NCBI GenBank assembly: GCA_904063045.1
Contig: CAJFCJ010000007.1
Coordinates: 492,819 to 556,818, forward strand
Reading direction: 5' to 3'
Length of the DNA stretch: 64,000 nt
From: Dimorphilus gyrociliatus
Lineage: Eukaryota; Animalia; Annelida
The translations under genes and the position numbers were made by a program. Of this stretch, positions 4,360 through 6,225 are shown in pieces (position 1 is the stretch's first letter; the number at the start of each line of letters is the position of its first letter). The notes below the pieces were generated by a model. That model did no database searches and was not told where the DNA came from. It saw only the letters and a list, made by a program, of their open reading frames with translations.

Positions 4360-4613
4360 CTTGAAAATACACAGTGTTGTACTTTTGTAATGATAAAATT
4401 TTATGTAAAAATCAAAGCCTTCGAAGAGAAAAACGCCAATAATATTAAACCATTGAATTTCGTTTTATTTTTATTTTTGTTGGACAGCTGTAACGCGGGC
4501 GTTAATTGGTCAGTTATTCACCTCAGAATAAACTGTTATAGCTTCAGTAAAATAGTCAAAGGCTATTTAAATCAATTTTTTTCCTACTCTTAGATAGAAA
4601 ATATAAAATTATC

Positions 4614-5971
4614 ATGAGCATTTCTAATTGTAAAGAGAACCAATCTAAAATAGTATTTTTTTCTTCAGAGAGTGTTGGAGAAGGAAATCCAGGTTGTTTA
4701 TTACTGTGAAATTTTATTTTTCCATATTATCGCCCTCTCCTAATTTTTTGCTTACAGATAAAATCTGCGATCAAATAAGTGACGCTGTGTTAGATGCCCA
4801 CCTTGAAAGAGACCCAAATGCAAAAGTAGCGTGCGGTATAAGTCATTTTTAGGTTTTTTTATTTTTGTCAAAATAAAAGTACACAAATTGTTTTTTTTTT
4901 TCAGAAACTGTTATGCAAAATAGTATGGTGTTCTTATTAGGTGAAATATCAAGCACCGCTCGGGTTGACTATGAACAGTTGGTTCGACAAACTATTAAAA
5001 AGATCGGTTACACACACAGTGATCAGGGTTGCGACTATAAACTACTTAACGTAATTACTGCGCTCGAAGAACAAAGCCCCGACATTGCCGAGAGTGTTCA
5101 TCTAGGTAAAGAAGAGGAAAGCATTGGAGCAGGAGACCAAGGAATAATGTTTGGTTACGCAACTGATGAAACCGATGAATGTATGCCGTTGACAATTGTT
5201 ATAGCTCATAAGTTAAATATGAGAATTGCGCAGTTGAGAAAAACGGGAGAGTTGAAATGGGCACTACCGGATTCAAAAACTCAAGTTACTGTCGAATACT
5301 GCATGAACGGTGGATACTGCGTACCAAAGCGAGTATCGGCGGTTGTTGTCAATGTTCAACAAAGAGGCGGAGACAAAAATTCGATCAAAAACGATATTAT
5401 TAAAATTGTTAAAGAGACAATTCCTAATCAATTTTACGACGAAAATACAGTTCTTCATCTACAACAGGACAATGCAGCCACTAGAGGTCCTTTTAGATCA
5501 TGCGGCCTTACAGGACGCAAGATTATTGTCGATACATATGGTGGATGGGGGGCACATGGCGGTGGAGCCTTTTCAGGCAAAGATTTTTCGAAGGTAGACA
5601 GAAGCGCTGCCTATGCCGCAAGATGGATTGCCAAATCACTGGTTAAAGCTGGTCTATGTAGAAGAGTACTTGTTCAACTTTCTTATGCCATTGGTATTGC
5701 AGAACCTCTTTCAGTATTCGTAAATTCATATGGAACTGGAATTAAATCAGATAATGACTTGATTAACATTGTGAAACGAAACTTTGATTTACGTCCTGGA
5801 ATAATCGTCAGGTAAGTCTGGAAGAGTTAAAATTTCTTTTGTTTGTAATGAAATATTGCTCATTACAGAGATTTAAACCTTAAGGCAGCAATTTATAAGA
5901 GAACGGCCTGTTATGGTCACTTTGGTCGGAAGGAATTTACCTGGGAGCAACCAAAGAATTTAATTTACTGA
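4614..5971 (+). CDS. MAT: S-adenosylmethionine synthetase (MAT) family protein with degenerate active site, 4 exons
   Basis: ESVGEG(N)[47 protein letters not shown] and C-terminal YGHFGR are present. The frame is intact across three GT-AG introns, with stop TGA at 5969-5971. The start at 4614 is likely, but TTCTTCAG at 4661-4668 could alternatively be a splice acceptor. Confidence 0.93.
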
Positions 5972-6225
5972 TATTATTTAATGCTTTTTTCTCTATCCGC
6001 AAACTAGATCTGTTAAACAAAACAATCTGAATTTCATATTATGTGTTTAAGTCTATAGACTGTAAATATATTGGAAAAATTTATAAAATTAAGTGTATTT
6101 TAATTCATGACATATGAGTAACGAATTAACTGAATATTTATCAAACAGCCTTAGATATGAACCCACTCAAGCCTATGAAAAAGAATGGACAATTGACTTA
6201 ATTGTTATTACTAACTTCTGTGAAT

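What the first reader, a model, noticed from the sequence alone, without database searches (positions are those of the whole stretch)
4614..5971. SAM synthetase paralog with catalytic His to Asn and a rewritten adenine/Met-binding loop: candidate pseudoenzyme
Seen: the invariant GHPDK motif reads GNPDK (AAT at 4686-4688). The loop that is QPSGRFVIGGPQGDAG in human MAT2A reads [15 protein letters not shown] (5462-5506), one residue shorter and lacking the Phe and Asp. ISVQH has become VNVQQ. The rest, including GAGDQG and GGGAFSGKD, is highly conserved, and the frame and splice sites are intact. Established: this His (E. coli H14, human H29) is the catalytic acid, the Phe (F230/F250) stacks on adenine, and the Asp (D238/D258) binds substrate. 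MATs form active sites at dimer interfaces. Inference: a selected, catalytically dead or re-purposed MAT that could act as a regulatory subunit by heterodimerising with a normal MAT (analogous to trypanosome AdoMetDC prozyme) or as a SAM/ATP sensor. Several independent changes argue against a single sequencing error.
Basis: partly seen in the sequence, partly recalled or inferred. Interest (0 to 1): 0.78.

Follow-up and report, generated by a model that had tools for sequence, protein, structure and literature searches.

The report
Conserved disabled SAM-synthetase paralog in worm
The tiny marine worm Dimorphilus gyrociliatus carries, beside a normal SAM synthetase gene, a second copy whose ATP/adenosine-binding half of the active site has been rewritten. 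A distantly related species keeps the same rewritten copy under selection, so it is probably a non-catalytic or re-purposed subunit, a type not yet described for this enzyme family.

Summary
Window 4614-5971 (+) is an intact 4-exon gene of 388 aa, identical to DgyrCDS5702 of Dimorphilus gyrociliatus. It reads GNPDK (AAT at 4686-4688), VNVQQ, and a loop one residue shorter that lacks Ser247, Arg249, Phe250 and Asp258 (human MAT2A numbering).

The same genome has a canonical MAT, DgyrCDS11846, 66% identical with all motifs intact.

A syntenic ortholog in another species was assembled identically in 5 independent runs. It keeps Asn (also AAT), VQQ, the one-residue deletion and the motif DN..RGP[FY][RK]SCG. 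Synonymous sites are near saturation (62% of 4-fold sites differ) while dN is 0.16, so omega is about 0.1. This is not an error and not a decaying pseudogene.

All disabling changes sit on the adenosine-side half of the active site. The methionine-side residues, the triphosphate/Mg ligands and the Glu57-Arg264 dimer salt bridge are kept. Three tetramer-contact residues (K61, T62, Q80) are replaced.

The duplication looks specific to the dinophilid lineage. None of about 268 other MATs inspected combines these changes, and I found no paper on a MAT pseudoenzyme.

The function is inferred, not shown. Most likely it is a subunit that cannot make SAM by itself and may pair with the canonical MAT.

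The parts
4614..4692 (+). Exon 1 (ATG at 4614; ends in phase 1 after GNP)
   Evidence: matches P0001. The ortholog exon has the same length and the same phase.
4686..4688 (+). AAT = Asn25, in place of the catalytic His (human His29, E. coli His14)
   Evidence: Also AAT in ortholog L001. His in 114 of the other 119 first-search hits; the other 5 lack the motif region.
4758..4835 (+). Exon 2 ((D)KICDQ...KVAC); 100% amino-acid identity with the ortholog
4905..5811 (+). Exon 3, 301 full codons, carrying most of the three MAT domains
4916..4924 (+). Gln57-Asn58-Ser59, replacing the invariant Lys61-Thr62-Gly63 (B1-B2 loop, a tetramer contact)
   Evidence: The same QNS is in the ortholog. Role of rat K62/T63 from PMC8703375.
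5336..5362 (+). [11 protein letters not shown]: Ser197 (human His201) at 5336-5338 and Gln205 (human His209) at 5360-5362
   Evidence: Both are shared with the ortholog.
5462..5506 (+). Rewritten adenosine-binding loop [15 protein letters not shown] (human 245-260): S247D, G248N, R249A, F250 deleted, G253R, Q256F, G257R, D258S, A259C
   Evidence: The ortholog reads QPDNSVIRGPYKSCG with the same deletion.
5869..5971 (+). Exon 4 with stop TGA at 5969-5971
4404..4523 (.). About 120 nt of non-coding DNA between the divergently oriented PROPPIN gene and this gene. It has 4 mismatches to the other species and carries two opposed CCAAT boxes. Probably a shared bidirectional promoter.
   Evidence: No Rfam family and no stable RNA fold on either strand.

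Best explanation
A DNA-level duplicate of the MAT (SAM synthetase) gene arose in the dinophilid annelid lineage. It has been kept by selection for a role other than making SAM on its own. Its adenosine-side half-site was rewritten: the catalytic acid His29 became Asn, Ser247/Arg249/Phe250 were lost, and Asp258 became Ser. From published mutant and structural data, a homodimer should therefore be unable to bind adenine or catalyse adenosyl transfer. It keeps the methionine-side residues (Glu70, Gln113, Ile117, Lys289), all triphosphate/Mg ligands (Asp31, Asp134, Lys181, Arg264, Lys265, Lys285, Asp291) and the Glu57-Arg264 dimer salt bridge. Its tetramer-contact loop is changed. The most likely mechanism (inferred) is that it works as a non-catalytic partner subunit. 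Paired with the canonical MAT it would give a dimer with one complete site (canonical adenosine half plus the paralog's methionine/gating half) and one dead site, changing activity or regulation. Tripolyphosphate binding or hydrolysis is probably retained.
For: Intact 4-exon gene equal to DgyrCDS5702. A canonical paralog, DgyrCDS11846, with all motifs is in the same genome. The syntenic ortholog (PROPPIN - MAT - PDI) has the same intron positions, Asn, QNS, VQQ and the loop deletion, and is identical in 5 runs. Exon 3 shows dN 0.16 with 62% of 4-fold sites different, so omega is about 0.1. 41 shared-derived substitutions, 18 of them at columns invariant among the annelid-like canonical MATs. 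All ligand residues of the methionine/PPPi side are invariant in alignment A4. Literature: His29 is the acid/base catalyst (PMC3793261). S247, R249, F250 and D258 bind adenine and ribose on one subunit, and E70 and Q113 sit on the partner (PMC6850014; PMC3853416). MAT1A R249W, I252T, G257R, D258G and A259V lose SAM synthesis but keep PPPase. A259V, R249Q and R264H are inherited dominantly and are thought to act through hetero-oligomers with wild-type subunits (shown for R264H/R265H only). The fold is preserved (TM 0.9 to human MAT1A/2A, pLDDT 86.6 against 86.7 for the canonical control).
Against: The rewritten loop is itself at the dimer interface, so pairing with the canonical subunit is not assured. 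Retention of the paralog's own Asp31/Lys181/Arg264/Lys265 is not required by the partner-subunit model and hints at a ligand in its own site. It evolves about 6 times faster than the canonical MAT (71 against 12 differences in 295 columns), and gating-loop Ser114/Pro115 are lost in the ortholog.
Confidence: 0.5

Rival explanations
1. A neofunctionalised stand-alone protein. The remodelled pocket (new Asp-Asn, Arg, Phe/Tyr, Arg/Lys, Ser-Cys) binds a different ligand or nucleotide next to the intact triphosphate/Mg site. It could be a dedicated tripolyphosphatase, a polyphosphate or NTP binder, or an enzyme with a new substrate.
For: The derived loop residues are themselves conserved between the two species (DN, RGP[FY][RK]SCG), which suggests a used pocket rather than an abandoned one. 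All PPPi/Mg ligands, including those of the paralog's own half-site, are kept. Loop mutants of MAT1A and the monomeric R265H mutant keep PPPase activity. The tetramer-contact loop is changed, which fits a separate oligomeric state.
Against: No MAT-family member with another activity is known to me, and I found none in the papers searched. The N-terminal half of the loop (AAT against SVI) is not conserved. Without the His, group-transfer chemistry of the MAT type is unlikely.
Confidence: 0.27
2. It is still a working SAM synthetase with an unusual active site. Another residue would replace His29, and Phe/Tyr249 would replace Phe250 as the adenine stack.
For: Met-side and PPPi residues are intact. 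A new aromatic residue appears in the loop. Other natural MATs carry Ser-Cys at positions 258/259 with His and Phe intact (P0236 and P0259).
Against: The His is invariant across bacteria, archaea and eukaryotes and is assigned as the catalytic acid. From memory and not verified here, E. coli H14N lowers kcat for SAM synthesis by 10^3-10^4-fold (Taylor and Markham 2000). Four ligand positions are lost together. A fully canonical MAT is present in the genome.
Confidence: 0.08
3. It is a decaying or unexpressed duplicate that merely still looks intact.
For: It evolves faster than the canonical copy. No transcript is on record.
Against: The ORF, splice sites and length are preserved in two species whose 4-fold sites differ by 62%, with omega about 0.1. 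The derived residues are conserved. The upstream promoter-like block is nearly identical between species.
Confidence: 0.04
4. It is a sequencing or assembly artefact.
For: None found.
Against: The same substitutions, including the AAT codon and the 3-nt deletion, are in an independent species assembled identically from 5 runs.
Confidence: 0.01

Closest known systems
Canonical eukaryotic methionine adenosyltransferase (human MAT2A/MAT1A; Dimorphilus DgyrCDS11846)
   Same: Same three Pfam domains and fold (TM about 0.9, roughly 60-66% identity). Same Met-side, K+, Mg and triphosphate ligands, the same dimer salt bridge, and two shared intron positions with the Dimorphilus canonical gene.
   Different: His29 is Asn; Ser247, Gly248 and Arg249 are replaced; Phe250 is deleted; Asp258-Ala259 became Ser-Cys; Lys61-Thr62-Gly63 became Gln-Asn-Ser; Gln80 became Glu/Asp; His201 became Ser; His209 became Gln. 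It has one extra intron and evolves about 6 times faster at the protein level.
Trypanosomatid AdoMetDC prozyme (a catalytically dead paralog that activates its enzyme by heterodimerising; PMC6221367)
   Same: It is a lineage-specific duplicate of an enzyme of SAM and polyamine metabolism, has lost catalytic residues, is kept by selection, and belongs to a parent enzyme whose active sites form at subunit interfaces.
   Different: It is an unrelated fold. Here heterodimerisation and any effect on activity are untested, and the direction (activator or inhibitor) is unknown.
Dominant MAT1A variants of hypermethioninaemia (R264H, A259V, R249Q)
   Same: The changes lie in the same 245-264 loop at the dimer interface. 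SAM synthesis is lost with PPPase kept, and the variants act through hetero-oligomers with wild-type subunits.
   Different: Those are single deleterious alleles. Here a whole remodelled loop plus the His loss is fixed and conserved in a separate gene, and Arg264 itself is kept.
MAT2B (MAT beta), the known regulatory subunit of animal MAT
   Same: It would play the same kind of role, as a non-catalytic modulator of MAT alpha.
   Different: MAT beta has an SDR fold and docks onto the alpha dimer interface (PMC3793261). This protein is a MAT alpha homolog that would take the place of a catalytic subunit.

Membership tests
S-adenosylmethionine synthetase family (Pfam PF00438/PF02772/PF02773 fold) | Three MAT domains and the MAT fold | tested here: met
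   Pfam E-values of 6e-14, 1e-35 and 9e-51 on exon 3. Foldseek TM 0.89-0.92 to human MAT1A/2A.
Active MAT enzyme (EC 2.5.1.6) | Catalytic His of the GHPDK motif | tested here: not met
   Asn (AAT 4686-4688) in the window and in the ortholog.
Active MAT enzyme (EC 2.5.1.6) | Adenine/ribose ligands Ser247, Arg249, Phe250 and Asp258 | tested here: not met
   They read D, A/S, deleted and S in both orthologs.
Active MAT enzyme (EC 2.5.1.6) | Methionine-side ligands Glu70, Gln113, Ile117 and Lys289 | tested here: met
   Conserved in both orthologs.
Active MAT enzyme (EC 2.5.1.6) | Triphosphate/Mg/K ligands Asp31, Glu57, Asp134, Lys181, Arg264, Lys265, Lys285 and Asp291 | tested here: met
   All are present. 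Lys265 is Arg in the ortholog.
Active MAT enzyme (EC 2.5.1.6) | SAM synthesis activity | not testable with these tools
   Needs an enzyme assay.
Pseudoenzyme partner subunit ('prozyme'-type) | A paralog of an active enzyme that is present in the same genome | tested here: met
   DgyrCDS11846 is canonical. Holding the divergent pair together with the dinophilid canonical pair gives a better likelihood than the free tree (AU p 0.69).
Pseudoenzyme partner subunit ('prozyme'-type) | Catalytic residues lost, yet the gene is under purifying selection | tested here: met
   Omega about 0.1, with the derived residues shared across species.
Pseudoenzyme partner subunit ('prozyme'-type) | [quoted passage not shown] | not testable with these tools
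   Only indirect support: Glu57 and Arg264 are kept and the trans-donated half-site is intact.
Pseudoenzyme partner subunit ('prozyme'-type) | Expressed | not tested
No transcript-derived protein is on record.

The most novel reading that the evidence does not exclude
A 'MAT prozyme'. The paralog replaces one catalytic subunit in the MAT dimer and donates its intact methionine/gating-loop half to the canonical subunit's adenosine half. The result is an asymmetric enzyme with one live site and one dead site that still binds triphosphate. This would be a new, homolog-based way for an animal to tune SAM synthesis, distinct from MAT beta.
Probability: 0.3. Interest if true: 0.8.

Novelty: new variant of a known kind. 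Interest (0 to 1): 0.6.

Why it matters
MAT is among the most conserved enzymes known and supplies nearly all cellular methyl groups. Its regulation (MAT beta, the allosteric pocket) is a drug target. I found no description of a MAT-fold pseudoenzyme or re-purposed MAT. A natural, selected subunit lacking exactly the adenosine half-site would be a ready-made probe of several questions. These are how the two half-sites cooperate, whether tripolyphosphatase activity has a life of its own, and how hetero-oligomers (as in dominant MAT1A disease alleles) alter activity. Its known spread is narrow, only two dinophilid species, which limits its generality.

Tried and rejected

(2) An exact look-up of the window's 300-aa exon-3 ORF in public assemblies found nothing, so there is no independent assembly of this strain.

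(3) AlphaFold confidence of the rewritten loop was low (pLDDT 34-62). The canonical control is equally low there, so this is uninformative.

(4) Rfam search and RNA folding of the conserved flanks gave no family and no stable structure.

(5) The METTL16-type UACAGARAA site known from MAT2A and sams regulation is absent from the gene region. UACAG-type acceptors are not conserved between the orthologs.

(6) GC3 as an expression proxy showed no difference from the canonical MAT or PDI.

(7) Paper searches for H14N data, for DgyrCDS5702 and for an inactive MAT paralog found nothing usable. The H14N kinetics are quoted from memory only.

(8) P0161, the second-best hit of the region-limited search, is a canonical MAT whose gene model carries a duplicated segment.

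(9) The free tree could not place the long branch.

(10) The joined spliced model was not typed or searched. Exons were used by reference, and the identical stored protein P0001 was used where a full length was needed.

Full report
**What is there**

Window 4614-5971 (+) holds a 4-exon gene: 4614-4692, 4758-4835, 4905-5811 and 5869-5971. All three introns are GT-AG and there is no internal stop. Its 388-aa product is identical to DgyrCDS5702 of Dimorphilus gyrociliatus. This agrees with an earlier scan note that names the organism. Pfam finds the three S-AdoMet synthetase domains, and the best solved relatives are rat and human MAT1A/MAT2A at E about 1e-121.

Exons were used by reference. Where a full length was needed I used the identical stored protein P0001.

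**The observation**

- The codon at 4686-4688 is AAT, giving GNPDK.
- Codons 5462-5506 read [15 protein letters not shown], where canonical MATs read PSGRFVIGGPQ[GS]DAG. The loop is one residue shorter.
- VNVQQ replaces ISVQH.

The HMMER alignment to full-length human MAT2A gives the following in human numbering:

| Position (human MAT2A) | Paralog |
|---|---|
| His29 | Asn |
| Ser247 | Asp |
| Gly248 | Asn |
| Arg249 | Ala |
| Phe250 | deleted |
| Gly253 | Arg |
| Gln256 | Phe |
| Gly257 | Arg |
| Asp258 | Ser |
| Ala259 | Cys |
| His201 | Ser |
| His209 | Gln |

Among the other top hits, 114 have GHPDK and 5 lack the motif region. All 118 besides the paralog and its ortholog have G-x-F-[VI]-I-G-G-P-x-x-D-A-G. 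Of 224 columns that are at least 97% conserved in about 100 canonical MATs, the paralog departs at 38; 48 columns differ in it or in its ortholog.

**Canonical copy**

The same genome encodes DgyrCDS11846 (394 aa). It has GHPDK, ISTQH and PSGRFVIGGPQSDAG, is 66% identical to the paralog, and lies on another scaffold. Its first and last introns sit at the same positions as introns 1 and 3 of the paralog. The duplication was therefore DNA-based, not a retrocopy. The paralog has one extra intron (4836-4904).

**Ortholog and selection**

The only close relative found is P0002 (76% identity). It lies on genomic Logan contigs from five runs (SRR23372216, SRR23372228, SRR23372229, SRR23372231, SRR31984834) that are identical to each other apart from one base. 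The locus is syntenic: a PROPPIN gene upstream on the minus strand and the PDI gene downstream on the minus strand, as in the window. Reading L001 shows all four exons with the same intron positions. Exons 1, 2 and 4 have the same lengths; exon 3 carries one extra codon. Features of the ortholog:

- GNPDK, again with AAT
- I-Q-N-S-M in place of A-K-T-G-M
- VQQ
- the loop QPDNSVIRGPYKSCG with the same one-residue deletion

Over exon 3, 62% of 4-fold degenerate sites differ, which is close to saturation and corresponds to dS of roughly 1.3-1.5. dN is 0.16, so omega is about 0.1. The neighbouring PDI exons show 42% and 68% difference at 4-fold sites. The gene is therefore under clear purifying selection, and its odd residues predate the split of two well-separated species. 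This also removes sequencing error as an explanation.

**Rate**

A canonical MAT cDNA from a species at similar synonymous distance is 95.9% identical to the Dimorphilus canonical protein. This is P0009 on locus L006, with 48% difference at 4-fold sites. I could not prove that it comes from the same species as L001.

| Measure over 295 shared columns | Count |
|---|---|
| Differences between the two divergent orthologs | 71 |
| Differences between the canonical pair | 12 |
| Substitutions shared by both divergent orthologs (stem) | 41 |
| Of those, at columns invariant among the annelid-like canonical MATs | 18 |

The paralog is relaxed relative to the canonical enzyme (omega about 0.1 against roughly 0.02). 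It is still constrained like an ordinary gene.

**Origin**

- The two divergent proteins form a 100%-supported clade on a very long stem.
- The free trees cannot place it precisely, but it nests among annelid-like MATs (SH-aLRT 93).
- A tree that holds it together with the dinophilid canonical pair has a log-likelihood 10.5 units better than the quick free tree, and the AU test does not reject it (p 0.69).
- The four dinophilid proteins also share rare residues: Ile133, Val182 and Leu311 in P0001 numbering.
- I read this as a duplication within the dinophilid lineage. Long-branch effects and the many unnamed sequences are caveats.

**Where the changes fall**

Published structures put the adenine and ribose of SAM in one subunit and the methionine moiety in the other (PMC3793261).

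- His14/29, Asp163/179, Arg229/249, Phe230/250 and Asp238/258 come from one chain.
- Glu55/70, Gln98/113, Ile102/117 and Lys269/289 come from the partner (PMC3853416; PMC6850014).

Every disabling change in the paralog lies in the first group. Every residue of the second group is kept in both orthologs. Also kept are all triphosphate/Mg/K ligands (Asp31, Glu57, Asp134, Lys181, Arg264, Lys265 or Arg, Lys285, Asp291) and the Glu57-Arg264 inter-subunit salt bridge.

A second cluster of conserved changes hits the dimer-dimer contact. Rat K62, T63 and Q81 (human K61, T62, Q80) are three of the seven polar tetramer-contact residues, and T63V shifts the enzyme to dimers (PMC8703375). Here they read Gln, Asn and Glu/Asp in both species. 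The D93-F99 changes lie in a solvent-exposed flexible loop (PMC7271947).

**Consequences (inferred)**

His29 is the acid/base catalyst of the SAM-forming step. MAT1A patient variants R249W, I252T, G257R, D258G and A259V lose SAM synthesis but keep tripolyphosphatase activity. From memory only, E. coli H14N lowers kcat for SAM synthesis by 10^3-10^4-fold with less effect on PPPi hydrolysis. I could not retrieve that paper.

A homodimer of the paralog should therefore not make SAM, but may still bind or hydrolyse PPPi. A heterodimer with the canonical subunit would have two different sites:

- one complete site, formed by the canonical adenosine half plus the paralog's methionine/gating half
- one dead site

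Dominant MAT1A alleles in the same loop (A259V, R249Q, R264H) are thought to interfere with wild-type subunits through hetero-oligomers; mixing experiments showed this for R264H/R265H. The conserved new loop residues and the retained triphosphate ligands of the paralog's own half-site fit equally well with a stand-alone new ligand-binding or PPPase role. A SAM or ATP sensor of the usual kind is unlikely, because the adenine contacts are gone.

**Structure**

AlphaFold2 gives the MAT fold: pLDDT 86.6, TM about 0.9 to human MAT1A/2A. The loop region has low confidence. The canonical control has the same low confidence there, with mean pLDDT 86.7. Nothing can be concluded about the loop.

**How unusual**

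A search restricted to the loop region found no further members. It did reveal an unrelated lineage (P0236 and P0259, organism unknown) with Ser-Cys at positions 258/259 while His29 and Phe250 are intact. This is convergent according to the tree.

An exhaustive HMMER search of 1.84 billion cluster representatives listed 150 diverse MATs.

- 132 have GHPDK. Of the remaining 16 with no GxPDK match, most are fragments and the four whose motif region was shown keep a His or are misaligned.
- Two carry another residue at the His position: P0329 has Gln and P0299 has Tyr.
- A few have aberrant loops: P0344, P0279, P0278 and P0396.
- None combines both kinds of change.

Paper searches found no MAT pseudoenzyme.

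**Limits**

- No transcript-derived copy of the paralog is on record.
- A nearly identical promoter-like block lies upstream of the gene in both species.
- No contig looked human, and none was set aside.

**Verdict**

This is a real, selected MAT paralog that is almost certainly impaired in SAM synthesis, and it is new for this family. Its role as a partner subunit is plausible but unproven.

Noticed in passing
window 4404-4523 (weaker conservation to about 4574): A non-coding block of about 120 nt lies between the divergent PROPPIN gene and the MAT paralog. It has only 4 mismatches to the other species, although 4-fold sites there differ by 42-68%. It carries two CCAAT boxes in opposite orientation, has no Rfam match, no stable RNA fold, and the overlapping ORF is not conserved. 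It is probably a bidirectional promoter.
   Followed up: partly
window 6074-6214: A block of about 141 nt between the MAT stop (5971) and the PDI stop (6226, minus strand) is about 95% identical to the other species. This is far more conserved than the synonymous sites of either gene. It is presumably a constrained 3' UTR element of PDIA3 and/or the MAT paralog. No Rfam match.
   Followed up: partly
proteins P0236 (JGI) and P0259 (Logan), organism unknown: A separate long-branch MAT lineage has GGPKSSCG, with Asp258-Ala259 replaced by Ser-Cys as in the Dimorphilus paralog, but with GHPDK and Phe250 intact. The tree places it elsewhere, so the Ser-Cys pair looks convergent.
   Followed up: partly
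cluster representatives P0329, P0299, P0344, P0279, P0278, P0396: Among 150 diverse MAT representatives, two lack the catalytic His (GQPDK and GYPDK) and four have loops without the Phe and/or Asp258. Other undescribed MAT-like proteins with lost catalytic residues may exist, mostly of bacterial type. Errors were not excluded.
   Followed up: no
window 4836-4904: Intron 2 of the paralog has no counterpart in the canonical Dimorphilus MAT gene, whose long exon spans it. This is either an intron gain in the paralog or a loss in the canonical copy. The intron is present in both divergent orthologs.
   Followed up: partly
proteins P0003 (Lamellibrachia satsuma), P0161, P0121: These MAT gene models carry a duplicated C-terminal or internal segment. 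That inflates their scores, and they look like annotation or assembly artefacts.
   Followed up: no
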